Counted from the stretch's first letter, positions 23,673-63,715 are shown. The stretch: 64,000 nt of DNA from Mobula birostris (GCF_030028105.1 NC_092370.1:185548005-185612004); one strand, 5' to 3'. Made by a program: numbers and translations. The notes: generated from the sequence alone by a model not told the origin.

Positions 23673-25791
23673 ACACAACAGGAATTCTGCAGATGCTGGA
23701 AATTCAAGCAACACACATCAAAGTTGCTGGTGAACCAAAGATTCCCACACCATCACCGACTTTATCCGCTCAGGGGATCTCCCATCCACTGCTACCAACC
23801 TTATAGTTCCCACACCTCGCACTTCCCGTTTCTACCTCCTACCCAAGATCCACAAACCTGCCTGTCCTGGCCGACCTATTGTCTCAGCTTGCTCCTGCCC
23901 CACGGAACTCGTTTCTGCATACCTCAACACGTTTTATCCCCCCTTGTTCAATCCCTTCCTACCTATGTTCGTGACACTTCTCACGCTCTTAAACTTTTCG
24001 ATGATTTTAAGTTCCCTGGCCCCCACCGCTTTATTTTCACCATGGATGTCCAGTCCCTATATACTTCCATCCCCCATCAGGAAGGTCTCAAAGCTCTCCG
24101 CTTCTTTTTGGATTCCAGACCTAATCAGTTCCCCTCTACCACCACTCTGCTCCGTCCAGCGGATTAGTCCTTAATCTTAATAATTTCTCCTTTGGCTCCT
24201 CCCACTTCCTGCAAACTAAAGGTGTAGCTATGGGCACCCGTATGGGTCCTAGCTATGCCTGCCTTTTTGTTGGCTTTGTGGAACAATCTATGTTCCGTAC
24301 CTATTCTGGTATCTGTCCCCCACTTTTCCTTCGCTACATCGACGACGGCATTGGCGCTGCTTCCTGCACGCACGCTGAGCTCGTTGACTTTATTAACTTT
24401 GCCTCCAACTTTCACCCTGCCGTCAAGTTTACCTGGTCCATTTCCGACACCTCCCTCCCCTTTCTAGATCTTTCTGTCTCTGTCTCTGGAGACAGCTTAT
24501 CCACTGATGTCTACTATAAGCCTACTGACTCTCACAGCTATCTGGACTATTCCTTTTCTCACCCTGTCTCTTGCAAAAACGCCATCCCCTTCTCGCAATT
24601 CCTCCGTCTCCGCCGCATCTGCTCTCAGGATGAAGCTTTTCATTCTAGGACGAGGGAGATGTCCTTTTTTAAAGAAAGGGGCTTCCCTTCCTCCACTATC
24701 AACTCTGCTCTTAAACGCATCTCCCCCATTTCACGTACATCTGCTCTCACTCCATCCTCCCGCCACCCCACTAGGAATAGGGTTCCCCTGGTCCTCACCT
24801 ACCACCCCACCAGCCTCCGGGTCCAACATATTATTCGCCATAACTTCCGCCACCTCCAACGGGATCCCACCACTAAGCACATCTTTCCCTCCCCCCATCT
24901 CTCTGCTTTCCGCAGGGATCGCTCCCTACGCGACTCCCTTGTCCATTCGTCCCCCCCATCCCTCCCCACTGATCTCCCTCCTGGTACTTATCCGTGTAAG
25001 CGGAACAAGTGCTACACATGCCCTTACACTTCCCCTCTTACCACCATTCAGGGCCCCAAACAGTCCTTCCAGGTGAGGCGACACTTCACCTGTGAGTCGG
25101 CTGGGGTGATATACTGTATCTGGTGCTCCCGATGTGGCCTTTTATATATTGGCGAGACCCGACGCAGACTGGGAGACGGCTTTGCTGAACATCTACGCTC
25201 TGTCCGCCAGAGAAAGCAGGATCTCCCAGTGGCCACACATTTTAATTCCACATCCCATTCCCATTCTGACATGTCTATCCACGGCCTCCTCTACTGTAAA
25301 GATGAAGCCACACTCAGGTTGGAGGAACAACACCTTATATTCCGTCTGGGTAGCCTCCAACCTAATAGCATGAACATCGACTTCTCTAACTTCCGCTAAT
25401 GCCCCACCTCCCCCTCGTACCCCATCTGTTATTTGTTTTTATACACATATTCTTTCTCTCACTCTCCTTTTTCTCCCTCTGAATATATCCCTTGCCCATC
25501 CTCTGGGTTCCTCACCCCCCCCTTGTCTTTCTTCCCGCACCTCCTGTCCCATGATCCTCTCATATCCCCTTTTGCCTATCACCTGTCCAGTTCTTGGCTC
25601 TATCCCTCCCCCTCCTGTCTTCTCCTATCATTTTGGATCTCCCCCTCCCCCTCCAACTTTCAAATCTCTTACTCAATCTTCCTTCAGTTAGTCCTGACCA
25701 AGGGTCTCCGCCTGAAATGTCGACTGTACCGCTTCCTAGAGATGCTGCCTGGCCTGCTGCGTTCACCAGCAACTTTGATGTGTGTTGCTTG
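23673..25791 (+). mobile_element. Penelope-like retroelement (Neptune-type), 5'-truncated, RT plus GIY-YIG, inverted pLTR at the 5' end
   Basis: LPKIHK, GRPIVS, DVQSLYT, GVAMG, YIDD RT motifs; CxxxxCxxC linker; VIYCIWCSRCGLLYIGET; two frameshifts before 24230; 14-bp direct repeat tattaaatacagtc at 23659-23672 and 25792-25805. Confidence 0.95.
25689..25726 (+). ncRNA. Minimal type I hammerhead ribozyme in Penelope pLTR (core mutated)
   Basis: agtc-CTGACCA-agggtctccgcct-GAAA-tgtc-gact; CUGANGA changed to CUGACCA. Confidence 0.7.
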
Positions 25792-26451
25792 TATTAAATA
25801 CAGTCCTCATTTTTCATTATATTGACATCAAAACTGAATCACTTATACTGTAGATATCAATTCTATACACCCTTTTCATTATTGGTTTACAATTTTTCAT
25901 TTCACACAAACTTTTACCAACCATAGCATCAACTGAATGCATCTAATTGATTTCAAATTAGAAAGTCAACCGAACAGTTAAGTCATCAGTCCGAAATTTT
26001 AACCATTTCTCTCTACAGAAGCTGGGTATATCCAGCAATTTCCGTAAAAACACAAAGCAAATTAGAGCTGTACTTCTGTGCAAGACAGTCTTTGTGTAGC
26101 TAAGCTAGCAAGTGTCACATGTAAAGAACAGCCCATTGGAATGTTTGATGTTGCTTGAAGTCGAGCATATTTGAACACAAAATGATGCAGGCTTTGAAGT
26201 AATGCTCATAGCCATCAAGGACCCTAAGTCAGCACTAGGTCTTAGACAATAACAAAGAAAGATATGGGTAAAAATTTAATTGCCATTTTTCTCAGAACAC
26301 ATAGGCTTTGGGACAGCTATGGTAGCAGAACAAGAAATATTGGCACAGATGTCATCAAAAAGAAAACAGAAATTACGAGCTTCTTGAAAGATTGCTCTTG
26401 TGGGAAGATGAAAGGAATCACCACCTTTCTTTCAAGACACATCTTTAATGG

Positions 26452-27567: not shown

Positions 27568-27893
27568 TTAAAATTCAATCAAGTGTGTATATGGGCCATT
27601 GGTGTCCACTTGCAATACTTGTCTGTTTCCATATGTTCCATGCCTGACTACAACTCCAGATTCAGCACATTTACTGTTCGAGGCCAACTCTTTTTCACAG
27701 AGAGCTACAAAGTGTGCATAAAGCTCTTTGCCATCCTCTTTTCTAATATTGTCATGATATTGCATGGCCCGTCCCTTCACTTTACCACCCAAAGTAGCCT
27801 GGGGTATGATAAGAACATTTGCAGGTAGATCCAACACGGACAAATGGTTGCCTTCATTATCCTCACAGAGTTTCACATTCAACAGTGTTTTAA
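27568..27893 (-). CDS. DTD2: DTD2 exon 3 (last coding exon); spliced protein 161 aa
   Basis: gttgcag|TT AAA ACA... phase 1; contains the DTD2/ATD signatures PQATL and TNGPYTH and ends THLIEF*. Total CDS 486 nt. Confidence 0.97.
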
Positions 27894-42200: not shown

Positions 42201-42559
42201 ACGATGGGCCAAAATGGCCTAATTCTGTTCCTATATTTTATGGTCTCACAATGTGGCAAGTACTTTCTGTGCTCCAGTGAAACCAGTCAGAATAAATTAT
42301 GCAAAAGGAAGACAGAAGTAAAGAAACACCACCACAAAGGAACATTACTAGTTATAATTAACAGGAGATCTTGATATTTGCATTTTGAGTGCAACAAAAA
42401 GTTTACAAGGCATTCTTTGCCTCTACTAAGGTCAAGATCAAATACTACCAAAAAATATCTTTTTCTTCCATTTTTTTTTAAACCAGCAAGTGAACCTTTG
42501 ACTTTTTTTTCCATGGTCCCTACATTCTGAATATTGACAGAGTTCACACTGTGAAACCA

Positions 42560-44561
42560 AATCTCAATATTAATATTTTATTTTACTTAAGTAACAGTTA
42601 ATTCTACAATATAAAATTATAAAAATACTTGAAGGTGAAAGAGAATGGATTCTTTTCCCATTGGAAATAGATCTATTTACAATTCATGGATAAATCATCC
42701 AATTTAGTTGTTTAAAACACAAATGCACTTTGTACCCCAACCTATTCAAAGACACCCCCCTCCCAAATTACAACTGGCTAGCAGTGAAAATTCATACTCC
42801 AGATCCCTTCCATTAATCTTTATCTTAAGTGGACACAATAGTAGCTTCAAGTTTCCACTAAAAATTAAAATTCTTCAGTGGCAAACAGTTAATCCTCCAT
42901 TTCTATGGCTAAACAGATCTTTCTTCAGTTTACATTTTCTGTAATTTAACAGTTCTTCCAAGTTATAAAAAGGAGACCAACTAAAAGTACCAAATATGAA
43001 ATTCAGTAACTAAAAAGTGATGTCACACAACTTTAAATTGAACTTCTATTAACATATGCTTTTTAGTACCTACCAGTATTAAACATTAATATGTGTCTGC
43101 CAAGAGAAAGCACACAATGACAACTAAGGTTCAGTATGCAAGCAGAAACACTGTCATTTCAACCAACACCAATAACCAATTAACTTACCATTTTTCAGCA
43201 TCTTTATCTAGTTACATTCATTGCAAGTTAAAAGATAATTAACTAACTCACCTTTGTTGACAACTGAAGATTAACTGAGCCATTTTACAATAACTGTATG
43301 CAAAGTCACCATTTGCCAATCACATTTAAAGGCTCATAGGATTCTAATTAGGAATAACTTAATTTGGAAAGAACAGCTTAGCTGTAAAACTGAAAACAAA
43401 AGCAAGGAACAAAGTTGTTCAGAAGAAATGCATGTATGTCCAGTGTGCATTCCAAGCAATTGTATTCACTTACTTGGGTAAATGGTTTCAATATTTTACC
43501 CCAAATTCTTGGGAGTTATGAACTCCTTGCCAAGAGCAACATTAGCTTGATTTAATTTCATCCTGGTCAATGTGGAAATAAATACATCATAAATCAAATA
43601 CACACCAAAAGCAAATACCGCAATGTTAGTAGTACTCAATTTCCTACATCACCTAAAAAAGTTGACTTCAATGTTTAAAAATTTAAAAATCACTTTTTAA
43701 AGAAATAGAAGCAAATACTTATTGTCCTGTTGGGAACAGAAGATTGACTTCTTCATTGAGATGACAATAGTAAACACCGTAGTTGAGCACCTGCCTCAGC
43801 ACAGAAAAGGGGAAAAGGTCTCCTTAAAGCCATATAAACCTTACTGGAATGTCAGCAAATCAGACAATATTTGAATAAATGAGAAAAAAAAACACACTCA
43901 GTTGCAGTTCATGCTATTAGGACAAAGTTCTGCCAAGGAACAATATATCTCTCAATATGGAGTACTGCCCTTTAATATAGCACTGTAGGATTTCCATTTA
44001 CTGAAGCATTGCTAACTGCACATGTGGTGAAATAATCATTACTCAAAAACAACTGAATGAAAGATCTGTAATGCAACAGCAAACCTAGTAGTGCTTTGGA
44101 ATAAAAGGGAACAAAATGAGAACAGGATAGTGGATGATGCAAAATATTCTTCTACATATAGTTTGAAAGATCACATTGTGTTAATTTGATGTTCACTGTA
44201 TTGCCATCACTTAGAACAATAGTTAAAAGTACCTAAATAGTGTGCCTGTTTAAGTCCTATGCAAACCTTAACATGAAACGTGATGACTCTGCCTGCTAGA
44301 ATTATTTTCTCCTGACATTATATTGGTTGAAATGTGAATTCAATCCTTGCACTGAATTTAAACCCCTTGAAAGAATGGTTCAAAGTTGAGCTATCAATAA
44401 CTTTTCCAAAGAAATGGATTTGTTATTCAACATGCAAACTCTGAAGAATTAAAAAATATTGTTGTGAACCTGTATTCAGTCACATTGGAAAACATACTGT
44501 ATACAAAATAAGAATATGTAACAAAGACACAACTTTGCTTAAAAAAAAATTGAAGGGTAGC
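42560..44561 (-). other. Putative 3'UTR of the Myb/SANT-like gene with poly(A) signal AATAAA at 42582-42577
   Basis: About 2 kb of AT-rich sequence with no recognisable TE, ending at a minus-strand AATAAA. Confidence 0.5.
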
Positions 44562-44908
44562 CTAAAATACTTTCCTTTCAGTTATTTCACTTTCAGTAGC
44601 TGTAGATGTGGAAGGAAAGTCCGCCATATTATGGCCCATCATCTGTCCTAGCATGAATAGAACGCGAGCTTCATGCTCTCTATCACTTTGCCTCATCCTC
44701 TCCTCCATTTCCATGCGGAGCTGCTCAAGACGAGCAAACCGTTCCTCTGATGCCTCCATGTAACGGAGAAATTTTTCATCTGCAGCTTCACTGTAGCGAA
44801 TGAACTTCTCCATCATCCCATCCATTATGTCCTCCAGTGAATGCTTCTTGGCTTTCTTCGGCTGAGGTGCAAATGGTAGAGATGAATGCATACGCCGAAC
44901 ACGGGGAG
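44562..44908 (-). CDS. Myb/SANT-like protein exon 2 (basic patch plus coiled-coil C-terminus); spliced protein 291 aa
   Basis: Acceptor gtgcttttgttttcag|CT in phase 1 joins exon 1 in frame; PKKAKK, then an E/R/M-rich helix ending DREHEARVLFMLGQMM; TAG at 44564-44562. Confidence 0.85.
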
Positions 44909-45909
44909 CTGAAAACAAAAGCACAACATATTTGAAATGTGCCTTACCTAAGCAAAAGAATGATGGCAAACCGAAAAATAATTAAATCATAGGAAACCAC
45001 GGATTTCCAGACATAATAGTAGTGGTGGACACATCCACCAAATATTATGTAGTTCTTATCCATAGTTGGTGTGAACTATCAAAACAATATTTTAATAATG
45101 CAGTCAAAATTAAGGCTTGTTGGTTTATTTATATTTTTCATTTTTACATTACTAAACAGTTCTCATAAGCTTTGATTATCAGATACACAAAAATAATTCA
45201 AAGGTCTCTGATATCAAGAAGCAGGTCCTAAGGGTCTGCTATTCAAAGGCTTCACAGGGCTGTAAAGACCTAACATTCAGGATAATCTTCCCTGAAGGCA
45301 AGTGGGCTTGTGCAATCAAAACACCATGGGAAAATGCCTGATTAAGCATGAACCAGCCTATTAGCAAGAAGACATATTCATTCTCTAATCACTGTCACGA
45401 ACCAGCAAATTTCAATCTTTCTCTTCACTAACCAACTCAACTCATTCGTTGCTTAAAGTCAGCTTAGAACGAAGATGAGAGTGCAGCACAGGAACAGGCC
45501 CTTCTCACTTTTAGAACAAATATTCAGGAAATCACACAGTTGTATCCAGCCTCAGTACATCTGCCATGGAATCATTCATCTATAGCCCCTAGTCTTGAAA
45601 ATTACAATGTGGTGGCATGCTAGTCTCCCACAGTCTACGCTTACACTCATTTTCAAACTCTGCCATGTTTTACTACTTTCCAACTCTGATATCCTTCATT
45701 TAGTAATTTCAAGATGTCTTTTTCTGGGCTTTTCATTATACCTGAATTTAATTGCTCCAACATTCATGCAATGCTTATATCCTTCAAAATGCTCTACAAA
45801 TGCTACTCCTTTAACCAATATTTTTGCTCTAAATTTCATTGGAGCTAGTGACAATAAGATCAACATGTGCTCTTATTTCTTATTTGATTACAGCAACATC
45901 AAAGCACCT

Positions 45910-46040
45910 GAGATTCAAGTTCATTTATTTATCACAAGTACATTGAAACATACGGCGAAATACATCCTTTGCATTAATAACCAACAGAATCCAAGGATGT
46001 GCTGGGGCAGCTCACAAGTGTCACCAGGCATTCTGGCGGT
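45910..46040 (-). mobile_element. SINE 3' tail fragment
   Basis: gattcaagttcatttatttatcacaagtacattgaaacatac...ggatgtgctggggcag, same tail as 12960 and 26452. Confidence 0.65.
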
Positions 46041-46779
46041 GAAGTTTTATAATGAAATTTCTGTACTCAAGTTAGCTGTCAACAAGGTACTTCGCAGTTC
46101 AAAAATTAAGAATGACACTAATTTTGAAGAAGGCAAGAGAAACAAAAACTTCAAAAGAGAGGATTCCAGGTTTGTTCCTACTCGAGTGTCATTGTGGGTA
46201 CCAGTGTCTGAATCTCTTAGTTTCTGATAAAGTAAGTTTGGCAAGACCGTGCTGTAAGCATTTGGTCTGGAATTAAGACCCCATTGCAAATAAGTTTCTC
46301 TATTCCTTCCTTACTGAACACTCCTCACTTAAATTTTCTCCCCATCGTGACACATAAGATTAGTTTGTTTTTGTCTGGGATCTGTGTCGGGTGAATGGAG
46401 GTCCTCCTTTGTCACACCAAACACCCAAGCTTGCAGGTTAGTGGCATAAACTCTGATCACTGTCACATGCTGTTTTCACTGGGAATGCATCAAAAGACAT
46501 TCAGTTCTTCAACAGGAGTTGTTAATTCAGCAAAGAAGCTCTTTATTGATGGTGAAGCCCACTTCATGAATGTAGCATTTTCTTCAGGCTTACTCCTACT
46601 TCCACTCCTCACTGAATTCTTAGAGCTAATTATTTATTGCCTAACAGAGCAGCCAGACCCCTTAAATTAAGAAAATAACACTGTCAACTAGAAATGTCTG
46701 ACTAGAAATAAATGAGTGAGGTGATTTTTCAACTAAAAGGTGAAGCCTCAGAAACAAAAGGTGTTCCAGCAGAAGTGAT

Positions 46780-48170
46780 AAAGCTTACAGTTAGAAAGTA
46801 CAGTCACTACATCTGAGAAGAGGTGAACATGTCAGGGGAACACAGACACTACAATCACAACCATCCTCAAGAGAGGAGTCAAATCTCACTGTGATGACCA
46901 CTGGCAGGAGAGCTGTTCAATAACCTATTGGATTCTGGAAGCACACCAAAACATGACTTTTGCTGCACAACAACTTCGAGATATATAGGAAACAGTGCCA
47001 ATGACTGTGACCTTTCTGAACCTTACTAAAACCTTCCAATACAGTAAATAGAAGACTATGAAGCACCCTCAAATTTGGCTTCCCACAGAAATTTATCTCC
47101 AACTTTTCTTCATGGCGGTATAAATGTCTTGATTTCAACCAATAATGCTAAAACAGGCCCAATCTCAGCACCACCACTCTTATAAGATCACCTCATTACT
47201 GTCACTCCCCCCACCCCAAATATTTTTTCCCTGTATGTTATCATCAACATGCTTTCAGCTGGAATGCAACTATTCAACACTACAATAGGATATTTAACCT
47301 GTGTCACTCCCCAGTCACCCCACCATCAGTCCTGTAGTTGCAGCTTGGGTCTATGCACACTGGAAGATTAATCCCCAAGACATTATTGACTAGTTCAATG
47401 AAGCCAAGAGGTTGGCCATACATCAATATCCATGATACAGGCATATTCTACCAAACTGCCAACACTACACAACAGCACCTTCCAGACCAAAAAAAAACCA
47501 ATGACAAAACAATGAAAAATGTAGTAGCACCTCTCAATGAAGTCAAACATCAATGATGAAACTCACCATGACTTCCATTGTCCACAATAACTTCAGCTGT
47601 CTAACAAAAATCATATCTGAAGATCAAGACCTTATAATCAACACAAAACCATGGTCTACCAGCAGTGATCTCTATCCTCCTATGTTTGACATACAGCACC
47701 TCAAAGCATTGAAAAGACTTAACCAACACTGTCTTCACTAAATTCTCCATGATCAGTATCCTTCACTAAATCTAGCATGATCAGTATCCTTCCTCAGAGC
47801 AACATCTACAACACCGAGAACTCAGTCTGTTCTGTTTGATAAGGCACATTGTTTGCATGGCCAATACCAGATTCCAAAACAAATATTCTACTATGGGCTG
47901 TCAAGGAGATTATTAGACACACAAAGTAATAGATTCAAAAATATTCCCAACATTCTTATTCAAATACAAAATCTGAACAAATTCCTGAGAATCCCTGACA
48001 CACAACTACGAGAGGTGAAGTATTCAGGAATCTGTTAGAACCTCAACCAATACAACGGGAGCCTATCAAAAACAGCAGGAGCAGCACTCTGGTTCACCAA
48101 CTACCACCCTGTCCATTTGTGGCAGAATCTCAAGGTCTTAAATGGCCATAAATAACTGGAATCATTTTTA
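46780..48170 (+). mobile_element. Highly degraded RTE-clade LINE in the intron of the Myb/SANT-like gene
   Basis: C-terminal remnant IPKQIFYYGL...RFKN resembles the RTE motif RxPKQxLYGEL...RFKD. Confidence 0.55.
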
Positions 48171-48619
48171 ATCTTGAGGGACTGCCTAAGAATAAAAGTA
48201 TTAATCATGCTCAAACTGTTGAATGGAATATCAAAAAGTAGGCAGCAAGCTCGCAGCAGTTATACCAGTTCTGAAAATACTTCAAGATTTATAGGAGCTG
48301 CACCCAATAGGTTAACAAAGAGTTACCCCCATTGCATTCTTGACTTGTGCCTTGCAGATGTTGGAAAGGCTCATGTCTCCATTTTTGTGATGAATTGCTA
48401 GTGGTACACTGAGTAATATCAGTTAACATCCTTACTTTTGATCCAAGATTAGTTCTACAAAGAAGTTAAGAGCAGTCACTTAGCTCATTGTATTTTTTTT
48501 CTTATGCTGTAATTGCAATAACAACTTATCATGCAAATTGGTTACCTTACTGCAACTTTACATGTTTACTACATACCCCCATAAATACAGTTCCAGCAGT
48601 CAACAGTACAGACACAAGC

Positions 48620-49080
48620 ACCGTCGCAGGAAAGCAGCATCCATCATCAGAGGCACCCACCACACTGGACATGCTCTCTTCTCACTGCTGCCATCAGAAA
48701 GGTGGTACAGGATCCTTAGGATTCACACCACCAGGTTCAGGAACAGTTATTGACTCTCAATCATTGGATCTTGAACCAAAGGGGATAGCTTCACTTGCCC
48801 CATCATTGAAATGTACCCACAACTTATGGACTCACTTTCAAGGACTCTTCATCTCATGTTGTTGATATTTATTGGTTATGCATTTATTATTTCCTTCTTT
48901 TTGTATTTATAGTTTGTTGTATTTTGTACACTGGTTGAACACCCAAATTGGTTCAATCTTTCATTGATTCTATTATGGTTATTATTTTATTATGGATTTA
49001 TTGAGTATACTGACAAGAAAATGAATCTTGGGTTGTATATGGTGACATATGTACTTGGATAATAAATTTAATTGAACTTT
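48620..49080 (+). mobile_element. Rex1/Babar LINE 3' end
   Basis: KAASIIRGTHHTGHALFSLLPSERWYR..TTRFRNSY; tail aataaatttaattgaacttt. Confidence 0.85.
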
Positions 49081-51443
49081 ATATTCACTTACCTCCAGGA
49101 GATATAGGTGTGAAACATCAGAAATAAAATTTATCAGAATTACATCACTAGTATCAGTTCACCAGTTGATCCTGGAGTGTAAAAATACAGTGGTAATCTT
49201 CACAAAATATACTATGGTAATATGATGAAAAGACTAAAATGTTCTGAATTATTGCAAGTATTTTATGTAATCTAGTTGTCCTTGCTGAACAAATTAACTT
49301 TGAATGGTTTTTTTGATTCTTGTGTTGTTGGCAGCTTTATGCAGTGGAACTATCAAGAATAGGAGTTACCAGCTAAGATTACCAGAGCTTCCAACAATGA
49401 AAACTGCACAGGCCCCTCAGTTGCTTCAAATAGTTGAGGGGAAGAAAAATAAAATGAGTTCCTTGAAAAAAAAAGGACCCACTTATGCAACATGGGTATA
49501 CAATGCCTACAAATTTGCACAAGATATCCATGTGTACACAATATATAGACTGGTATTAGAATCAAAGGACAATGGGATAAGAATTTTTTGACATTCTACC
49601 AGCTTTTTGTTTAGAAGGTGTCAGAAATCTGATATATAAAAGAAGAAAATGCTGGAAACACTCAGCCATTTCCGAAATGAGATGCTGGCAGAGTTTCAGA
49701 CCGTTTTCTTTTTCACAGTAGTGACCCCACTGCAACATCATAATACTTTTTTCTAATGATTGCAGGGAGTTTTGCCAACACCAGTCAGGATTCTATTCTG
49801 CACTTCTATAACTGAATAAGGTTACTAAAAATTCCGTTACCTTTAAACAAACTGAGATAAACAATGATTTCAAGGAAGATTCTTACTTATTTACCTCAGA
49901 TTATCCTTTCAGCTACTTTAATGGGCTCAAACTCAGAATGTAATTGTTTCTCATACCTCAGATCCCTGATCCACTAGGAACAGGCTTTTCTCTACTCTGG
50001 AGTGCTTGAATGCCTCCACTGGCAAGTCATTGGCTGGGATGTGTTTAGATGGCTGCAGCAAATGTTTCACACAGAACTCTTCAATAATGAAGCATATCTG
50101 TATGCAATGAAATATGTTCAATATTCAGTTTGGGTTGATAAGTAGCGGGAACACTCATACTACCAACATACCACGCAACGGCTATTCCTAACAAAAGAAT
50201 AAATCCAACCACAAACCTTGTCATTCAGCAACATCACTAATATTACAACTTCATCAATATTCTTACATACAGTGCATTGACGAGAAAATTGGACTACCGT
50301 TTAAGTAATTAACCCACAAAAACACAGCCTCGCTCACCAAAATCTTTCCAACATAAACAAGATCCAAGACAAGCTTGTATCATGATATTCTTCATTACGA
50401 GTTAAAACTCCAGAAAATGTAAAATATCATCCAAGTAAAAATGAAATACCAGTGAATGGCACCCGTTCCAAAAATATCCGTGCACTCCGGCGCCAATACG
50501 TACAATCAATCCAAAAGGTGCAACGTAATTATTCTGGATTATGTTTGTCAACACTGCCCAACCACGTTATCTCTCCCCAAAAAAAACGCACGGAAAATTA
50601 ACACGACAGTTATCCTACAAATCACAAATATTTAGTTAAGAAACAGTTATTTGTTCATAGCCAATAATTCAGAAATGGAAAATTCTTACCTAACAAGTTT
50701 GTGGAAGCGATTGCAGAGGTTCCCCGCCCCATCAAGAACAAGAGGAAAACAAATGTGTATTTGTCTTGCCTGCACACATGAATAATATGCCAGAATTCAG
50801 CACACTAGATAGGGGGACACCTGTACTAAAAGAGACCTTTATTTTTTAAAACCATGGAACATGGTCCATAATTTGAAATTTAAACTTGATTGGAGCGGTT
50901 TCTGAGAAGCGCTTAACATTTGATTGGACTCAACACAAGTGATTACTTAAGCTAAACGTTATTTACTCCTGAAAAACAATTCATAGTTAAATATGCCTCA
51001 AAATCATCTTGTTGTCATAGGCACAGGCACACTAAAAAGTCTACCAAGAATGAAAACGAACGTGTGACTAACGAATTAGAATACACGCAGACAAAAGAAC
51101 CCGTCAAAAGTACTGTTTGGCGAAGAATTACGGACATCAAGTTGTATTTGCAAACGTTAATTTGTGCGTCGAGAGTTCATAAATTTTAAAAATTGAGAAA
51201 TTGGGGATTGAGGCGTAGTTAACATAACAAGCTCAAGTTAATTTAGTGACTCAGATAAAAGCATGTGTTGGGGGATCAAGTTTATTACAACCTCCATTAT
51301 CGTTAGAAGTCTTCCTCTGCTTTCTAAATAGTTACTGAACTGTAACTTATTCGACAGGTAACGATTAGGACATTTCTACTTCCACACGCTGCACCAGTTT
51401 TAAACTAACATTTGCACTTTCTAAAAGAGGAAATTACACTTAC

Positions 51444-51972
51444 TACAGAAAGCGCTGGTAGAGGGCTGAGGCTCAAATTGCCGGTTACTGGTCTCTCCCA
51501 TCGAATGATCGGGCTCCTCCGAGGAACAATGGCCATTGTGGCATTCCACTCTTTGACTTATATCAGAATGCGGACTGTTTTGCTCCTCTTTAATATCCTG
51601 CGACTCGCCGGGTGTCGCGATCGCGTCAATGACTACGGGTCGTTCATTGGCAACCCGGGTGCCGAGCACCGCGTCCAGCTGTTCGTAGAAGCGGCAAATC
51701 TTCCTGCCACTGGCGCTGCAGCCCCGCCTGATGCTGTCCTTGGCCAGTGTGTACTTCCTCTTCAGCCCCTTGATGCGGATGCGGCACTGCTCCGGGGTGC
51801 GGATGTAACCCTGGTCCAGCAACTGCGACGAGATGAACTTAAAAACATGGCTGTTCCTGAGCTGCTCGTCCAGCGCCGTCTGTACATTCTCCTCGCTCCA
51901 GACGGCGATCAGCGCCAGGGTCTCCGCGTCCGACCACAGGGCACCGCGCTCCGACCTCACTTCTGACATCAT
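51444..51972 (-). CDS. Myb/SANT-like (trihelix, Myb_DNA-bind_4 type) DNA-binding protein, exon 1
   Basis: MMSEVRSERGALWSDAETLALIAVWSEENVQTALD...RNSHVFKFISSQLLDQGYIRTPEQCRIRIKGLKRKY...CRFYEQLDAVLG is a typical trihelix/MSANTD pattern; donor TGT A|gtaagt, phase 1. Confidence 0.9.
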
Positions 51973-52466
51973 TGGAAACCAATCGCCCGGCGCCCGGACA
52001 CCTCCTGCACCGCAGCACAAGCACGGCAGCCAACCGACCGCTCCAGCGCGGGCCCGGTCCCCATCAACAAAAGAGCCGGGAGGAACGCCACCAACTCTCT
52101 CCCATCCCTCCCCCAGAAAAAGGTTCAGAGCAACGGTTCACACCAAAGGCCCCTTCAAATTTGCCCCCTCTGAGAACCATGGGTAGATGCTGGCGTCATC
52201 CCGACTTCCGGCCGTTGTCAAGCACCTGAGCGAACGCTGTGTTTAGATGGTTTAATAGCCGCGCTCTTGATGTTGTGGGGACGAATAGGTGACTGGTTCG
52301 TGAGGCTAAAACGTGATGCCAGCGTTTAGACCCTTCCGTTATCGGTTAAGGCCAAAGCGAGATATTGAGGCCTCTGGTGCAGCTTCTGTTGTTCGGACGG
52401 TCGCCTGGTGGTGACGCAGAAGGAGTGGCGGATGTGCGCGTGGGACAGTCGGTGGCCGGCGGTTGG

Positions 52467-52544
52467 ATGGCGCAGCTGTGCGGAGCCGGGTGGCGTCACC
52501 TCGGGCCAAGCGTGGCCATGGCAGCCCGGGCGGCGCGCTTCTGG
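52467..52544 (+). CDS. NUBPL: NUBPL (Ind1, mitochondrial Fe-S/complex I assembly P-loop NTPase), exon 1 CDS
   Basis: MAQLCGAGWRHLGPSVAMAARAARFW is Arg-rich and acid-free like a mitochondrial presequence; donor TGG|gtgggt in phase 0 fits exon 2. Start codon uncertain (alternatives 52518 and TTG 52365). Confidence 0.65.
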
Positions 52545-53469
52545 GTGGGTGTCCGTCTCGTCTCCTCCCGTCCCCGTCCCCCGTAAACGACCCTCTGTAT
52601 TTCAGTGGGAAACCCTTGCCCTTTGCTTTGAGTCACTTGTGTTATATGACTGCCTCAACCCCGGTTACAATTTTAATTGATTGGGTGGGCTCCCTCAATG
52701 GATGCTTTTGTTCGACTGTTGGTTGTGGATTTTAATTGGTGTGATTCTGTGTAGTCGGTTTCAGATAACAAGAACCTCTCAGATTATTAACTTGCGCGAT
52801 AAGCTCCAGTAACTTCTCTTACTTCGTCCAGCCACTTCCTCTTTGCCTACATTTTTTGACGATGCTCACACCATTGCATCTCCAATCCTAATACTATTTG
52901 ACCTTGCCAAAGCCCGAATGGCTTCAGCATTTACTGCCGGCCTGCATGACGCCTTCAAAATATTACAGATTTTATTGGCACGCCATGATCTCGGGATCTA
53001 GTTGGCTCAATGTTGATTGCCTTTGGTTGGTTCCCGTCATTGTCCATGTCGTGCTAAGCCATGAGCTTCATTGAATGCCAGCTGTCTGAGGCTCTTCAGG
53101 TTATTGCATGAATTTAGACGAATGAGTTGGTCCAAAACAATGTAGTAGTTAGATGCTCATCTTTGGGCATACAGCATGTTCCACTGGAGTCACCAGTGAG
53201 CTCAGTACAGTAGCATTGATGAAGTTACTGACAACAGCAACCCCAATGCATTAAATGGAAATGCCAGTCCTTGGGGAAAGTTTTGCTTATTCTGTTCTGG
53301 TTTCAGTACATCTAGGTGTTTTGCTTTAACATATGAAATACAAGCACTTAAACCCATTCTGTAGTTCAAGAACAAGTATGATCCGATTTTAACTTCAACT
53401 GTACCTTCCAACCTACCCCTGTACTGCTTCACCTCATCTCCCACCACACACACATTTATCAGTAATTTA

Positions 53470-53774: not shown

Positions 53775-55397
53775 TAAATATTAAGCATGTAGATATTAGG
53801 AAAGAGGATGTGCTGGAGTTTTTGGAAAGCATCAAGTTAGATAAGTCACTGGGACTGGATGAGATGTACCCCAGGCTACTGTGGGAGGCGAGGACGGAGA
53901 TCACTGAGCCTCTGGCGATGATCTTGGAAACATCAATGGGGACGGGAGAGGTTCCGGAGGATTGGAGCGTTGCGGATGTTGTTCCTTTATTCAAGAAAGG
54001 GAGTAGAGATAGCCCGGGAAATTATAGACCAGTGAGTCTTACTTCAGTGGTTGGTAAGTTGTTGGAGAAGATCCTGAGAGGCAGGATTTATGAACATTTG
54101 GAGAGGTATAATATGATTAGGAATAGTCAGCATGGCTTTGTCAAGGGCAGGTCGTGCCTTACAGGCCTGATTGAATTTTTTGAGGATGTGACTAAACACA
54201 TTGATGAAGGAAGAGCAGTAGATGTAGTGTATATGTATTTCAGCAAGGCATTTGATAAGGTGCCCCATGCAAGGCTTATTGAGAAAGTAAGGAGGTAAGG
54301 GATCCAAGGGGATATTGCTTTGTGGATCCAGAACTGACTTGCCCACAGAAGGCGAAGAGTGGTTGTAAACGAGTCATATTCTGCATGGAGGTCGGTGACC
54401 AGTGGTGTGCCTCAGGGATCTGTTCTGGGACCTTTACTCTTTGTGATTTTTATAAATGACCTGGATAAGGAAGTGGAGGGATGGGTTAGTAAGTTTGCTG
54501 GTGACACAAAGGTTGGAGCTGTTGTGGATAGTGTGGAGGGCTGTCAGAGGTTACAGCAGGACATTGATAGGATGCAAAACTGAGCTGAGAAGTGGCAAAT
54601 GGAGTTCAACCCAGGTAAGTGTGAAGTGATTCATTTTGGTAGGTCAAATATGATGGCAGAATATAGTATTAATGGTAAGACTCTTGGCAATGTGGAGGAT
54701 CAGAGGGATCTTGGGGTCCAAGTCTATAGGATGCTCAAAGCAGCTGCGCTGGTTGATGCGGTGGTTAAGAAGGCATACCGTGGGGTCTTCATTAATCGCG
54801 GAATTGAATTTAGGAGCTGAGAGGTAATATTGCAGCTATTTAGAACCCTAGTCAGACCCCACTTGGAGTACTGTGCTCATTTCTGGTCACCTCACTACAG
54901 GAAGGATGTGGAAGCCATAGAAAGGGTGCAGAGGAGATTTACAAGGATGTTGCCTGGATTGGGGAGCATGTCTTATGAAAACAGGTTGAGTGAACTTGGT
55001 CTTTTCTCCTTGGAGTGATGGAGGATGAGAGGTGCCCTGATAGAGGTGTATAAGATGATGACAGGCATTGATCGTGTGGATAGTCAGGGACTTTTTCCCA
55101 GAGCTGAAGTGGCTGCTACAAGAGGACACAGGTTTAAAGTGCTGAGGAGTAGGTACAGAGGTGATGGCAGGGGTAAGTTTTTTTTTACTCAGAGAGTAGT
55201 AAGTGCGTGGAATGGGCTGCGGGCAACGGTGGTGGAGGCGGATACGATAGGGTCTTTTAATATACCTTTGGATAGGTACATGGAGCTTCAAAAAATAGAG
55301 GGCTATAGGGAAGTCTAGTAATTTCTAAGGTAAGGACATGTTTGGCACAGCTTTTTGGGCCGAAAGGCCTGTATTGTGTTGTAGGTTTTCTATGACT
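53775..55397 (+). mobile_element. Relatively young 5'-truncated CR1 LINE (RT domain plus 3'UTR)
   Basis: NYRPVSLTSVVGK, QHGFVKGRSC, FSKAFDKVPH, SGVPQGSVLGP, SKFAGDTK; a few stop codons. Confidence 0.95.
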
Positions 55398-60214: not shown

Positions 60215-60720
60215 AGTAACATCTACTGCCACAATGAGGCCACTCTCAGGTTGGAGAAGCAAGACCTCATATTCTGTCTGGGTAGCCTCCAAGTTGATGA
60301 ACATTTATTTTTCTAACTTGTAATTTTTTCTTCTCTGCTTTCCTCTTCCATCCCCCACTCTGGCTCCCCCCTTACTTCTCCTCACCTGCTTATCACCTTC
60401 CCTGGTGCCCTCCTCCTTCCCATTGTCCACTCTCCCCTCCTATCAGAGTCTTCATCTTTATCTCATTACCTTTTCCACCTATCACCTCCCACCTGTTCTC
60501 ACATAATCTCCCCTCCCCCACCCACCTGGCTTAACCTATCACCTTCTTCCCTTTCCCCACCATCTTATTCGAGCTTCTCTCTTCCTTTCCAGTCCTGGTG
60601 AAGGGTCTTGCCCCGAAATGTCAACTGTTTATTCATTTTCATTGCTACCTGATCTGATGAATTCCTCCAGCATTTTGTATTTTTTACCCTGGGTTTTCAT
60701 CTGCAAAATCTCTTGTATTT
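60215..60720 (+). mobile_element. Old Penelope 3' fragment with hammerhead remnant at 60590-60627
   Basis: EATLRLEKQDLIFCLGSLQ; agtcCTGGTGAagggtcttgcccCGAAAtgtcaact. Confidence 0.8.
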
Positions 60721-61679: not shown

Positions 61680-61827
61680 TCTTCAGGATCCAGTACTGAA
61701 TCACCACAGGAGAGGCAAAAACGACTGATGGCTCGGGGACTCCCAAAGCAAAAAGCAATTCCTGGAGTGAAACATATTATTGTTGTAGCTTCTGGAAAAG
61801 GAGGTGTTGGAAAATCAACTACTGCAG
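61680..61827 (+). CDS. NUBPL: NUBPL exon 2 (deviant Walker A)
   Basis: ttttaag|[50 protein letters not shown]|gtatat; 148 nt; aligns without gaps to human [49 protein letters not shown]. Confidence 0.95.
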
Positions 61828-62782
61828 GTATATAGTTTTCTAAATGTCAACTGTTTCATTTTATAATATGCAATATAAGGCTTCCAAAATATTTTGGGAA
61901 ATGGCATTCTTTTTGCTGTGGATCCAGTCTTGAAAAATTTGGGAATGGTAGTAAACAATTCTGTATTTGAATCATAAAAATAAAAATGAATTATTGCCTT
62001 GTGTTTATTTTTAAAACTATGCAAATGGAACATCCCATGGTGTTAGAAATAAAGCAACAAAACTCAAAAATTCATATCAATCAATTTTATAAGTCTTACA
62101 AAAGTACCTGAAGCACTTCAGTAAATGTCAACAGTTTAAAGCTGTTAGTATAAATGAAGTCAGTGTTTCCATTGGTTTGATGAACAGACCTTTTAATACA
62201 TCTCGAAATCTGCCACCATTCTAAAGGTCAGCAAATTGAAGGCAACCAGAACTGTGATTTCATTATTCCAGATATAAATGGTTTTGTTGTATTATAATGG
62301 AAATACATTGAATTGTGGCACAGTCTTTGTTAGACTACTTCTTTACAAACACATCCATGTGGATGCTCCATTTCTCTGTAATCACTTGCAAAAGGGGAAA
62401 AGTAATGTAGTAAAGAGACACCTGAGATTTATCGACTAGAAATTTTTCTTTTCCTCTTAAATGGAAATGAATTGTGGAGATGCGGAGAATGCTTATTGTT
62501 TGTTTGCCAACTGAAAATTCTCAAGCTGTTCAGTTGGTTTTGAAATTCTGATATACAAGTATGGCATAAAATACTAACAAAAGTTTATCTAAATTTCAGT
62601 GAATTTGGCTTTGGGATTAGCAACCTTCGAATCGGTAGGTATATTTCCTTTTGGAATGTATAATTTATTTTGAGGCATTGTGTAAGATGAAATATTTGTG
62701 TAAAAATTTCTGGTATTGTAAATAAATTTCAAAACAATTTCGATTTGTGCAGTCCTTAATGGGAAAATGTAGTTAGCAGTTA

Positions 62783-63269
62783 GCAGCCTCCAACCTGCTG
62801 GCATGAACATCGACTTCTCTAACTTCCGCTAATGCCCCACCTCCCCCTCGTACCCCATCTATTACTTATTTTTATACACCCATTCTTTCTCTCACTCTCC
62901 TTTATCTCCCTCTGTCCCTCTGAATATACCCCTTGCCCATCCTCTGGGTCCCCCCCACCCCCCCCCCCCGTCTTTCTTCCCGGACCTCCTGTCCCATGAT
63001 TCTCTCGTATCCCTTTTGCCTATCACCTGTCCAGCTCTTGGCTCCATCCCTCCCCCTCCTGTCTTCTCCTATTATTTTGGATCTCCCCCTCCCCCTCCCC
63101 CTCCAACTTTCAAATCCCTTACTCACTCTTCCTTCAGTTAGTCCTGACGAGGGGTCTCGGCCTGAAACATCGACTGCACCTCTTCCTAGAGATGCTGCCT
63201 GGCCTGCTGCGTTCACCAGCAACTTTTATGTGTGTTGCTTGAATTTCCAGCATCTGCAGAATTCCTGTT
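62783..63269 (+). mobile_element. Young Penelope 3' fragment (pLTR)
   Basis: Very similar to 25352-25791; flanked by gttagcagtta and gttaacagtta (11 bp, 1 mismatch). Confidence 0.9.
63139..63176 (+). ncRNA. Minimal type I hammerhead ribozyme (best-preserved copy)
   Basis: tagtc-CTGACGA-g-gggt(ctcg)gcct-GAAA-catc-gactg: stem I agtc/gact, intact CUGANGA and GAAA, loopless stem III. Confidence 0.78.
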
Positions 63270-63715
63270 GTTAACAGTTACACTAATGTATTCAGTATTA
63301 ATAATTTGTCACAGCAAAAAATTATTTGTAGGACTAATAACACCTGTCATTTTCAAATATTAGGCAGAACTTGAGAAAATGGTGAACCATGGTTAGTCTG
63401 TTCACAGAGAAAAATAAAGATTGACTGCTATAACAAAGGACAGCTTTTTCCTGATGTAGTTATGGACATCTCCCTGAAGCACTAAGAAGTATTGACCACA
63501 GTGAAGTTAAATATGAGGTCATGTCCACTCTTCCATTCTCAAAAAGTATCAAGATCTTTCACCATGTATCAGTTTTGGAGTTCAGCATATCCCTCTCTCC
63601 TTTCTTACCAAATTATCTGTAAATCAGGTGCTTTTTTTTTATTCTCTATACATCTAGTCAAGGGCTAATGACCATATTTATGAATAATTTAAATTTGAGG
63701 CATTAAACAAATATA

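What the first reader, a model, noticed from the sequence alone, without database searches (positions are those of the whole stretch)
44562..51972. Candidate domesticated Harbinger-derived Myb/SANT gene between DTD2 and NUBPL
Seen: an intact spliced 291-aa ORF (GT-AG, phase 1/1, 6.5-kb TE-laden intron) with a trihelix Myb/SANT-like domain, linker, PKKAKK basic patch and coiled coil; CpG-island start; TE-free 3'UTR; no Harbinger DDE ORF or TIRs visible nearby. Known: PIF/Harbinger transposons encode such a Myb-like protein, and NAIF1 and the MSANTD genes are domesticated versions; human has GPR33, not an MSANTD gene, in this interval. Inference: a host gene, possibly restricted to cartilaginous fish or lost elsewhere, and probably uncharacterised.
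Basis: partly seen in the sequence, partly recalled or inferred. Interest (0 to 1): 0.85.

Follow-up and report, generated by a model that had tools for sequence, protein, structure and literature searches.

The report
Conserved shark-and-ray trihelix Myb/SANT gene
This is a real, expressed two-exon gene for a small DNA-binding protein that has stayed about 90% identical across sharks, rays and chimaeras, and whose nearest relative in bony vertebrates is an extra front end of the enzyme gene NAXD.

Summary
A two-exon, 291-codon ORF lies on the minus strand (51972-51444 / 44908-44562) with a GT-AG, phase-1 intron. It starts in a CpG island shared head to head with NUBPL and lies downstream of DTD2. 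Exon 1 carries a Myb_DNA-bind_4 (trihelix, GT-1-like) domain. Exon 2 carries a PKKAKK patch and one long helix.

In 4 of 4 runs laid, from two organisms, one long contig starts exactly at the predicted donor and the intron beside it is empty. NCBI already predicts the identical 291-aa protein. Its 90% cluster has 21 members from rays, skates, sharks and a chimaera, under inconsistent names. My searches found no paper that describes it.

It is not a transposon copy. I found one copy in the window, no terminal inverted repeats and no transposase domain.

Its nearest relatives outside cartilaginous fish (52% identity in the Myb part, 35% in the C-terminal part) are the N-terminal Myb-helix module of long NAXD isoforms across bony vertebrates. 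The two form sister clades with moderate support and long stems, so orthology versus old paralogy stays open. Harbinger origin fits the literature on this family but was not tested.

Verdict: a new member of a known kind, of moderate interest.

The parts
51444..51972 (-). Coding part of exon 1 (176 codons plus 1 base; ATG at 51972, second ATG at 51969)
   Evidence: Read directly. The Callorhinchus ortholog P0023 aa 1-176 maps to 51969-51442 by tblastn. In 4 of 4 runs one long contig's match begins exactly at 51444.
51670..51936 (-). Trihelix Myb/SANT-like DNA-binding domain (aa 13-101)
   Evidence: Pfam PF13837 E 2.3e-19. AlphaFold model pLDDT is above 90 over aa 10-104. A profile of A3 hits only Arabidopsis GT-1 in the PDB, E 8e-11. 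The top Foldseek hits are GT-1 2JMW/2EBI, prob 1.0 but E 0.05-0.1.
51442..51443 (-). Splice donor GT (GTAAGT)
   Evidence: Read directly. Contig matches stop here in 4 of 4 runs, and the bins 50922-51323 are empty.
44909..51443 (-). Intron, 6535 nt, phase 1
   Evidence: There is little or no contig depth except at the repeat at 48510-49112. None of 9 ORFs has a Pfam match.
48510..49112 (.). High-copy interspersed repeat inside the intron
   Evidence: Summed contig depth is in the thousands in all 4 runs, with many diverged short pieces and joints.
44562..44908 (-). Coding part of exon 2 (114 codons plus TAG at 44564-44562), after acceptor AG at 44909-44910
   Evidence: Read directly. P0023 aa 174-290 maps to 44915-44565. 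The acceptor was not seen directly in reads.
44844..44861 (-). Basic patch PKKAKK, a likely nuclear localisation signal (inference)
   Evidence: P191-H199 is invariant in 15 of 15 orthologs. A basic patch sits at the same place in relatives.
44622..44846 (-). One long alpha-helix (residues 21-95 of the exon 2 piece)
   Evidence: AlphaFold pLDDT is 87-98 over these blocks. 78 of 80 columns of aa 191-270 are invariant in 15 orthologs. The heptad test was not significant.
42553..44561 (-). Inferred 3' UTR of about 2.0 kb
   Evidence: The X5 and X6 contigs run 2356 and 2351 letters beyond the donor. With the acceptor at 44908 they end at 42553 and 42558, which is 24 and 19 nt after the AATAAA at 42582-42577.
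42577..42582 (-). AATAAA polyadenylation signal
   Evidence: The only AATAAA within 2.5 kb after the stop codon.
51600..52599 (.). CpG island holding the 5' ends of this gene (-) and of NUBPL (+)
   Evidence: CpG observed/expected is 0.65-1.17 against 0.29 for the window. Contigs are continuous from 51444 to 52500 and beyond in 4 of 4 runs.
27571..27882 (-). Neighbour: last coding exon of DTD2
   Evidence: Pfam Tyr_Deacylase E 3.5e-21, profile positions 49-144 of 144.
61704..61832 (+). Neighbour: NUBPL exon with the P-loop
   Evidence: Motif scan. Pfam ParA 'NUBPL iron-transfer P-loop NTPase' E 2e-5.

Best explanation
This is a single-copy host gene of cartilaginous fishes. It encodes a 291-aa nuclear protein with four parts: an N-terminal GT-1-like trihelix (Myb/SANT-like, PF13837) DNA-binding domain, a partly conserved acidic linker, a PKKAKK basic patch, and one long C-terminal helix.

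It is transcribed from a CpG-island promoter shared head to head with NUBPL. One 6.5-kb intron is spliced out, and the mRNA most likely ends about 2 kb after the stop codon.

Shown: the gene structure, the domain, use of the donor in RNA-like contigs, and very strong protein conservation over the whole chondrichthyan crown.

Inferred: the trihelix binds specific DNA, the basic patch takes the protein into the nucleus, and the long helix holds a partner or a second copy. The protein would then act as a DNA-bound adaptor or transcription regulator, as proposed for other MSANTD-type proteins.

It belongs to the family of Myb/SANT-like genes thought to come from Harbinger Myb-like genes. Its nearest relative is the Myb-helix module that bony vertebrates express alone or in frame with NAXD.
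For: - Structure and frame. PF13837 at E 2.3e-19.
- Expression: in 4 of 4 runs (X1 and X3 with 0 differences; X5 and X6 with 9 differences in 1057 letters) one long contig's match begins exactly at 51444. The intron bins next to it are empty, which a DNA library would not give.
- Prior prediction: the identical 291-aa protein P0001 is predicted by NCBI. Its 90% cluster has 21 members, including Callorhinchus.
- Conservation: 238 of 291 columns are invariant in 15 orthologs. By region: Myb 90 of 95, C-terminal part 78 of 80.
- Ortholog mapping: the Callorhinchus protein maps to exactly two blocks of the window, and no second copy appears.
- Fold: the only PDB hits of the profile are GT-1, E 8e-11. 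The model is confident over aa 10-104, and exon 2 forms one long helix.
- Not mobile: no transposase domain or terminal inverted repeats.
- Relatives: 52% identity (54/104) and 35% (29/82) to the Latimeria NAXD long isoform. The two groups are sister clades at 86/68 support.
- Family-wide build of Myb, basic patch and helix.
- Proposed roles of MSANTD and Harbinger Myb-like proteins: PMC9392472, section 14 read.
Against: - No codon-level test of selection could be run, because no ortholog DNA was available (look-up of encoding contigs closed). Against the near relative (organism B), exon 1 shows only 2 changes, 1 silent and 1 replacing, against 7 in the 528 letters upstream. That is too few to test.
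They rest on ortholog mapping and on contig lengths.
- The tool lists the runs only as 'RNA?', a guess.
- The coiled coil is not shown: the heptad test was no better than shuffles.
- DNA binding, nuclear import and partners are all inferred.
- Harbinger descent was not tested.
- Synteny in other species was not tested.
Confidence: 0.8

Rival explanations
1. Origin, rival A: the gene is the true ortholog of the Myb-helix module that lies in front of NAXD in bony vertebrates. One gene in the jawed-vertebrate ancestor later moved, or was captured by NAXD, in one lineage and then changed fast.
For: - The two groups are sister clades (ultrafast bootstrap 86, SH-aLRT 68; together in 82% of 200 bootstrap trees).
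- Inside each clade the branching follows the species tree.
- The spread is complementary. None of the 112 rows with an organism name among the 120 listed is a cartilaginous fish, nor is any named row. Conversely, apart from two rows without an organism name, the only hit outside cartilaginous fish was a turtle protein of the NAXD group at 50% identity.
- They share the same build: Myb, acidic linker, basic patch, helix.
Against: - The Myb domain is 97-98% identical within cartilaginous fish and 82-88% between coelacanth and the ray-finned bichir, gar and tarpon, but only 48-57% between the two clades.
- Both stems are about 1.0 change per column, against tips of 0.01-0.07 within cartilaginous fish. 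That needs a large and short burst of change.
- No NAXD exon lies in the window.
- Only the best 120 rows were visible, and could not see proteins under 333 aa. A shark copy next to NAXD could therefore have been missed.
Confidence: 0.4
2. Origin, rival B: the two are old paralogs or separate domestications of related transposon-borne Myb-like genes. Each settled next to a CpG-island promoter (NUBPL here, NAXD in bony vertebrates), with loss or absence in the other lineage.
For: - The long stems and the step from 82-98% identity within clades to 48-57% between them.
- Recurrent, independent domestication is what PMC9392472 reports for MSANTD1-4 and NAIF1 (section 5 read).
- Relatives with the same build occur patchily and in several copies in abalone (two loci), oyster, a sponge and a pupfish.
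Against: - Sister placement has only moderate support, and no transposon sequence was in the tree.
- No bona fide Harbinger Myb-like protein was compared.
- The complementary spread is just as well explained by orthology.
Confidence: 0.5
3. It is simply the cartilaginous-fish ortholog of a named gene, MSANTD1 or MSANTD2, as some NCBI names suggest.
For: NCBI calls it 'myb/SANT-like DNA-binding domain-containing protein 2' in several species. The protein atlas lists an 'MSANTD2' cluster at score 0.92 among PF13837 clusters (a lead only).
Against: - The NCBI names disagree between species: MSANTD2, ZSCAN29-like, ZKSCAN2-like, GT-3a-like, uncharacterized.
- Human MSANTD2 is given as 559 aa in four exons and MSANTD1 as 278 aa in three exons, and both are reported present from cartilaginous fishes to mammals (PMC9392472). 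This gene has 291 aa in two exons.
- Every one of the non-chondrichthyan hits I read that is 47-51% identical belongs to the NAXD group.
- I could not fetch true MSANTD1 or MSANTD2 sequences, so no direct comparison was made.
Confidence: 0.05
4. It is a transposon copy (a Harbinger Myb-like ORF) or a decaying pseudogene that gene predictors pick up.
For: The family is large, with 2121 hits at E 1e-3 or better in the representative library. Transposon fragments lie nearby (RVT_1 at 53810-54298).
Against: - The frame is intact and the protein is 90% identical between ray and chimaera.
- It is spliced and expressed.
- There is one copy in the window.
- No terminal inverted repeats or transposase were found.
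- For 14 of the 15 members listed the sequence was seen on one or two contigs. P0001, shared by Hypanus sabinus, Hemitrygon akajei and a third accession, was seen on 3.
Confidence: 0.02

Closest known systems
Myb-helix N-terminal module of long NAXD isoforms in bony vertebrates (PF13837 + PF01256 models, about 600-650 aa; also free-standing forms of about 320 aa)
   Same: It is the closest relative found: 52% identity in the Myb domain and 35% in the C-terminal helix region. The order of parts is the same: Myb, acidic linker, basic patch, long helix. It forms the sister clade in the tree.
   Different: That module lies in front of NAXD and is translated in frame with the dehydratase domain. 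The gene here stops after the helix, has its own 3' UTR and lies between DTD2 and NUBPL, and no NAXD exon is in the window. The sequence gap between the two is large compared with the variation inside each clade.
MSANTD1 and MSANTD2, vertebrate genes reported as derived from Harbinger Myb-like genes (Etchegaray et al. 2022, PMC9392472)
   Same: A small protein with a single trihelix Myb-like domain, at a fixed locus and strongly conserved. From recall only, MSANTD1 and MSANTD2 carry the same Pfam family PF13837.
   Different: The paper seeded its screen with human proteins and does not name this gene or NAXD in its main text; I could not see its supplements. The lengths and exon numbers it gives for MSANTD1 and MSANTD2 differ from this gene.
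Plant trihelix factor GT-1 (PDB 2JMW, 2EBI)
   Same: It is the only solved structure matched by the family profile (E 8e-11) and the best Foldseek match (prob 1.0, TM 0.64-0.69 on the target).
   Different: Identity is 24%. It is a plant transcription factor with no shared C-terminal module shown. The Foldseek E-values of 0.05-0.1 are above the tool's 0.001 line.
NAIF1 with HARBI1, and plant ALP2/ALP1 and HDP2/HDP1 (Myb-like adaptor plus transposase-derived partner)
   Same: The proposed working mode is the same: a DNA-binding Myb-like protein that also holds a protein partner (PMC9392472, section 14).
   Different: No partner is known for this gene. From recall only, NAIF1 belongs to another Pfam family (Myb_DNA-bind_5). 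A candidate dead Harbinger transposase gene noted elsewhere in this genome (s1-895775) is an untested lead.

Membership tests
Trihelix / Myb/SANT-like domain, Pfam PF13837 (Myb_DNA-bind_4) | Match to the family model above its curated cut-off, over nearly its whole length | tested here: met
   70 bits against a cut-off of 27, E 2.3e-19, profile positions 4-88 of 89.
Trihelix / Myb/SANT-like domain, Pfam PF13837 (Myb_DNA-bind_4) | Helical fold like the solved trihelix domain of GT-1 | tested here: met
   The profile of 69 sequences hits only GT-1 in the PDB (E 8e-11 and 1.5e-10). The model is confident over aa 10-104. Foldseek's top two hits are GT-1, prob 1.0, but at E 0.05-0.1.
Trihelix / Myb/SANT-like domain, Pfam PF13837 (Myb_DNA-bind_4) | Conserved bulky aromatic residues of the helices | tested here: met
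   W13 and W25 are kept in 90% or more of 69 aligned sequences, and Y74 is invariant.
Domesticated Harbinger Myb-like gene (MSANTD / NAIF1 kind) | Closest kin include Myb-like ORFs of bona fide PIF/Harbinger elements | not testable with these tools
   No transposon protein library was on hand. There are only indirect hints: patchy multi-copy relatives in abalone, oyster, a sponge and a pupfish, and the literature on the family.
Domesticated Harbinger Myb-like gene (MSANTD / NAIF1 kind) | No longer mobile: single copy, no terminal inverted repeats, no transposase beside it | tested here: met
   One copy in the window. Only short, weak inverted repeats. No DDE domain in the ORFs tested. The copy number in the whole genome could not be tested.
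Domesticated Harbinger Myb-like gene (MSANTD / NAIF1 kind) | Same locus in distant species (synteny) | not testable with these tools
Only this window's DTD2 and NUBPL neighbours were checked.
Domesticated Harbinger Myb-like gene (MSANTD / NAIF1 kind) | Purifying selection | tested here: inconclusive
   The protein is 90% identical between ray and chimaera, with 238 of 291 columns invariant in 15 orthologs. That points strongly to constraint, but dN/dS could not be computed.
Domesticated Harbinger Myb-like gene (MSANTD / NAIF1 kind) | Expressed as a host mRNA | tested here: met
   Contigs of 4 of 4 runs cover exon 1, stop at the donor and leave the intron empty.
MSANTD1 or MSANTD2 orthology | Closest non-chondrichthyan kin are MSANTD1 or MSANTD2, with matching gene structure | tested here: inconclusive
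   The closest kin are the NAXD-linked module. The structure differs from that given in PMC9392472. True MSANTD1 and MSANTD2 sequences could not be fetched for a direct test.
NAXD-linked Myb-helix module of bony vertebrates | Nearest sequence kin, with the same order of parts | tested here: met
NAXD-linked Myb-helix module of bony vertebrates | Lies in front of NAXD and can be read in frame with the PF01256 domain | tested here: not met
   A stop codon follows the helix. The NAXD part of P0281 gives no hit in the window at E 1 or better. The neighbours are DTD2 and NUBPL.

The most novel reading that the evidence does not exclude
The ray gene is the unfused counterpart of one ancient jawed-vertebrate gene. 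In bony vertebrates that gene became an alternative front end of NAXD, so a trihelix DNA-binding domain with a nuclear signal is made in one chain with an NAD(P)HX repair enzyme. That form is kept from teleosts to birds, opossum, afrotheres and xenarthrans, and appears to be lost in the other placentals, humans included. Cartilaginous fish would then offer the natural control for what the module does on its own.
Probability: 0.35. Interest if true: 0.7.

Novelty: new member of a known kind. Interest (0 to 1): 0.5.

Why it matters
Published screens for transposon-derived Myb/SANT genes in vertebrates started from human proteins (PMC9392472). Genes that humans lack are invisible to such screens. 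This gene is one of them. It is about 90% identical across the whole living diversity of cartilaginous fish, a level typical of core regulators, yet it has no stable name and no study. It also points to an undescribed, widely kept fusion of the same kind of module to the metabolite-repair enzyme NAXD in bony vertebrates. Together the two give a testable pair, free-standing and fused, for asking how a DNA-binding module is taken up by host genes.

Tried and rejected
- Transposon copy: rejected. There is no transposase domain, no terminal inverted repeat, one copy in the window, and the gene is spliced and conserved.
- Coiled coil: a single-register heptad test on the 75-residue helix was no better than shuffles (870 of 2000 reached the observed value). 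I therefore call it a long helix only.
- 'TE-laden intron': only one high-copy repeat is shown. No window-internal repeat and no transposon domain was found in the intron.
- Rfam: no RNA family anywhere in the window.
- Shark copy of the NAXD-linked module: looked for with a profile and with the coelacanth protein's first 300 residues. No row with an organism name was a cartilaginous fish. Only the best 120 of 559 and of 285 hits were shown, and saw only proteins of 333-1059 aa, so absence is not proven.
- The scan's own notes, searched by sequence and by the word NAXD, gave nothing.
- Paper search was badly framed: none of the 12 listed papers held 'MSANTD'. It was replaced.
- The second table (C-terminal identities) failed with a script error and was not repeated. 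One search gives the one figure used.
- The supplements of PMC9392472 (dN/dS table, extra trees and distribution) were not seen and may list further genes.

Full report
WHAT IS IN THE SEQUENCE

On the minus strand an ORF opens at ATG 51972, with a second ATG at 51969, and runs 176 codons plus one base to 51444. GTAAGT follows at 51443, and without splicing the frame would stop 7 codons later. A pyrimidine-rich tract and AG end at 44909. From C 44908 the same frame (phase 1) runs 114 codons to TAG at 44564-44562. The intron is 6535 nt.

The start lies in a CpG island. Over 51600-52599, GC is 0.53-0.71 and CpG observed/expected is 0.65-1.17, against 0.29 for the whole window.

- The last DTD2 exon lies at 27571-27882 on the minus strand (Tyr_Deacylase, E 3.5e-21).
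- A NUBPL P-loop exon lies near 61704-61832 on the plus strand. Pfam ParA, described as 'NUBPL iron-transfer P-loop NTPase', matches at E 2e-5; the score is just under the cut-off because the piece has only 43 residues.

Rfam finds nothing in the window.

THE PROTEIN, EXON BY EXON

Every search and fold of the window's own product was done on the pieces, and the joined step was left out.

Exon 1:
- Residues 13-101 match Pfam PF13837 (Myb_DNA-bind_4) at E 2.3e-19, 70 bits against a cut-off of 27.
- An AlphaFold model built on 69 aligned relatives has pLDDT above 90 for residues 10-104, and the rest is disordered.
- The family profile hits only the Arabidopsis GT-1 trihelix domain among all PDB sequences (E 8e-11 and 1.5e-10).
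- GT-1 is also the best Foldseek match (prob 1.0, TM 0.64-0.69 on the target), but its E-value of 0.05-0.1 is above the tool's 0.001 line.

Exon 2:
- It has no Pfam match.
- It holds the PKKAKK patch, and the model is one helix of 75 residues with pLDDT 87-98.
- A simple heptad test did not beat shuffles (870 of 2000). I therefore call it a long helix, not a proven coiled coil.

EXPRESSION

The one run search listed 23 runs, none on record as RNA and most marked 'RNA?'. I laid four of them, from two organisms and two studies, on 46500-52500.
- In each of the four, one long contig matches from exactly 51444, the predicted last exon base, through to 52500, the end of the stretch.
- The intron bins 49716-50318 and 50922-51323 are empty in all four runs, and the bins between hold only traces. 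Elsewhere the intron has little or no depth except at a high-copy repeat at 48510-49112.
- A DNA library would cover the intron, so these contigs behave as RNA and the donor is used in 4 of 4 runs.
- Organism A shows 0 differences. Organism B shows 9 in 1057 letters: 2 in exon 1 (one silent at 51748, one replacing at 51650, Ala108 to Gly) and 7 in the 528 letters upstream. That is too few for a test.

The contigs continue 335 to 2356 letters past the donor. With the acceptor at 44908, the two longest end at 42553 and 42558. That is 24 and 19 nt after the only AATAAA in the 2.5 kb behind the stop codon (42582-42577).

The contigs also run on beyond 52500 towards NUBPL. The transcribed regions of the two divergent genes therefore touch or overlap. 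The tool warns that such a contig is not a single transcript.

IT IS ALREADY PREDICTED, AND IT IS EXTREMELY CONSERVED

The exon 1 search returned a 291-aa NCBI protein that is 100% identical over exon 1 (P0001; Hypanus sabinus, Hemitrygon akajei and a third accession). The last hit was a turtle protein at 50% identity (9 hits among 101 candidates).

The 90% cluster of P0001 has 21 members. The 15 listed come from rays, a sawfish, skates, eight sharks and the chimaera Callorhinchus. Their names are 'MSANTD2', 'ZKSCAN2-like', 'ZSCAN29-like', 'trihelix GT-3a-like' and 'uncharacterized'.

Fifteen aligned orthologs are 90-99% identical to P0001, and 238 of 291 columns are invariant. By region, invariant columns are:
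- Myb domain: 90 of 95.
- Basic patch plus helix: 78 of 80.
- Linker: 49 of 86.

The Callorhinchus protein maps on the window as exactly two blocks (51969-51442 and 44915-44565), with no second copy. Other species have annotated isoforms that use other second exons or an inner donor (P0002-P0005 and P0008).

NOT A MOBILE COPY

- None of 9 intron ORFs, and none of 13 other ORFs tested elsewhere in the window, carries a transposase domain. The one transposon domain found is a reverse-transcriptase piece at 53810-54298.
- The inverted repeats found over 41.5-53.5 kb are short, AT-rich and 70-94% complementary.
- No repeat of 60 nt or more in the window falls within 42.5-52.5 kb.

NEAREST RELATIVES

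A full HMMER pass of exon 1 over 1.84 billion representatives gave 2121 hits at E 1e-3 or better. Many top rows are long models with several Myb stretches. Among the 26 hits I read, the single-domain ones at 47-51% identity form one group.

Named members of that group are an elephant 'ZSCAN29-like' protein of 204 aa, a finch and a turtle protein, and killifish proteins named as NAXD. Two searches followed: a profile of this group and the first 300 residues of the coelacanth protein. They show the group to be the N-terminal part of long 'NAXD isoform X1' models carrying PF13837 plus PF01256, about 600-650 aa long. These models occur in:
- coelacanth, turtles, birds, alligator, squamates, a caecilian, frogs and a newt;
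- opossum, afrotheres and xenarthrans;
- bichir, sturgeon, paddlefish, gar, bowfin and many teleosts.

Free-standing forms of about 320 aa also exist.

The fusion is not only a predictor's product. Ten unnamed Logan-derived proteins of 615-651 aa carry both domains on contigs of 2.3-3.5 kb, which leaves no room for introns.

Taxon spread of these rows:
- None of the 112 rows with an organism name is a cartilaginous fish (8 further rows had no name), nor is any named row.
- None is a boreoeutherian mammal.
- The limits are real. Only the best 120 of 285 and of 559 hits were shown, and saw only proteins of 333-1059 aa.

The window's exon 1 is 52% identical (54/104) to the coelacanth module, and exon 2 is 35% identical (29/82) to its basic patch and helix. 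The same order of parts (Myb, linker, basic patch, helix) is seen in more distant relatives from abalone, oyster, a sponge and a pupfish. Some of these are present at two loci or as many fragments.

TREE AND ORIGIN

The tree has 50 rows: 9 cartilaginous fish, 20 NAXD-linked and 21 others. It uses 297 columns, IQ-TREE and LG+C20.
- The cartilaginous-fish clade has support 100/100 and the NAXD-linked clade 100/99.
- The two are sisters at 86/68, together in 82% of 200 bootstrap trees.
- Inside each clade the order follows the species tree.
- Both stems are about 1.0 change per column, while tips within cartilaginous fish are 0.01-0.07.

In plain identities, the Myb domain is 97-98% alike within cartilaginous fish. 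It is 82-88% alike between coelacanth and the ray-finned bichir, gar and tarpon, and 48-57% alike between the two clades.

So either one ancestral gene changed very fast after moving or after being captured by NAXD, or the two are old paralogs or separate domestications. I put these at about 0.4 and 0.5. No transposon sequence and no true MSANTD1 or MSANTD2 sequence could be put in the tree.

WHAT IS KNOWN

Etchegaray et al. [quoted passage not shown] I read the abstract and sections 5, 8 and 14 and searched the main text for six terms.
- They found these genes by comparing human proteins with transposon sequences.
- MSANTD1, 2 and 4 are reported present from cartilaginous fishes to mammals.
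- They give MSANTD2 as 559 aa in four exons and MSANTD1 as 278 aa in three.
- The main text has no mention of NAXD (0 occurrences) or of a gene limited to cartilaginous fish.

Other paper searches gave nothing on this gene or on a Myb-NAXD fusion:
- 'Harbinger' with 'MSANTD': 5 papers.
- 'NAXD' with 'Myb': 8 papers, none relevant by title or abstract.
- 'MSANTD' with 'shark': 6 papers, none relevant.
- 'PF13837': 54 papers, of which the 15 listed are all on plants or algae.

That MSANTD1 and MSANTD2 carry PF13837, and that NAIF1 and MSANTD3/4 carry another Myb family, is my recollection and comes from no call. The protein atlas puts exon 1 among chordate PF13837 clusters (score 0.96 and below). 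It puts exon 2 nearest a chordate cluster without a name (0.92) and, weakly, near plant trihelix and NAM-associated C-terminal regions (0.88). These are leads only.

HOW IT MOST LIKELY WORKS

Shown:
- a trihelix DNA-binding type of domain;
- an invariant basic patch;
- an invariant long helix;
- a CpG-island start shared with a housekeeping-type gene;
- splicing and expression;
- strong constraint on the protein.

Inferred: the protein enters the nucleus through the basic patch and binds specific DNA through the trihelix. The helix is used to pair with itself or to hold a partner, so the protein acts as a DNA-bound adaptor or transcription regulator. This is what is proposed for Harbinger Myb-like proteins and their domesticated descendants. 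The invariant IKEE in the linker looks like a SUMO acceptor site. That consensus is recalled and was not tested.

VERDICT

The reading as a conserved, uncharacterised host gene of cartilaginous fish is supported. Harbinger descent is plausible but untested. The link to the NAXD front end is new to this finding.

I rate it a new member of a known kind, with interest 0.5. The scan's note s1-894877, on the promoter shared with NUBPL, agrees with what I saw. Notes s1-895775 and s1-895878 are untested leads in the same genome.

Noticed in passing
Related proteins P0281, P0205, P0216, P0324, P0331, P0344, P0329 and others; nothing of it in the window: Across bony vertebrates a Myb-helix module (PF13837) is read in frame with the NAD(P)HX dehydratase domain (PF01256) as a long 'NAXD isoform' of about 600-650 aa. 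Ten Logan-derived proteins on contigs of 2.3-3.5 kb show it as spliced mRNA. Among mammals it was seen only in opossum, afrotheres and xenarthrans. In elephants a 204-aa 'ZSCAN29-like' model has the Myb part but not the helix region. My searches found no paper on this.
   Followed up: partly
window 51972-52500: Contigs of all four runs are continuous from exon 1 of the Myb gene across the roughly 495-bp gap to the NUBPL side and beyond. The two divergent transcription units therefore touch or overlap. This matches the scan's note s1-894877.
   Followed up: partly
window 48510-49112: A high-copy repeat in the intron has summed contig depths in the thousands, with hundreds of diverged short pieces and joints in all four runs. 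It was not classified.
   Followed up: no
window 24230-25399 (+), with 25290-25822 repeated at 60222-60292 and 62785-63272: A 389-aa ORF without any Pfam match at E 0.01 lies in a repeat family present two or three times in the window (D3-D5, D10, D12 and D16). It is probably a retroelement-type transposon. Its cysteine-rich C-terminal part recalls the endonuclease end of Penelope-like elements, from memory only.
   Followed up: no
window 53810-54298 (+): A reverse-transcriptase fragment (RVT_1, E 1.1e-11) lies in what should be the first NUBPL intron.
   Followed up: no
Proteins P0002-P0005 and P0008: Other species have annotated isoforms that join exon 1 to different short second exons, giving Myb-only proteins. 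Basking shark has an isoform that uses an inner donor and skips most of the linker while keeping the frame.
   Followed up: no
   Followed up: no
same genome, other pieces (scan notes s1-895775, s1-895878): The scan noted a candidate catalytically dead Harbinger transposase gene and another Myb/SANT gene of 411 aa in this genome. The first would be a candidate partner and the second a candidate paralog.
   Followed up: no
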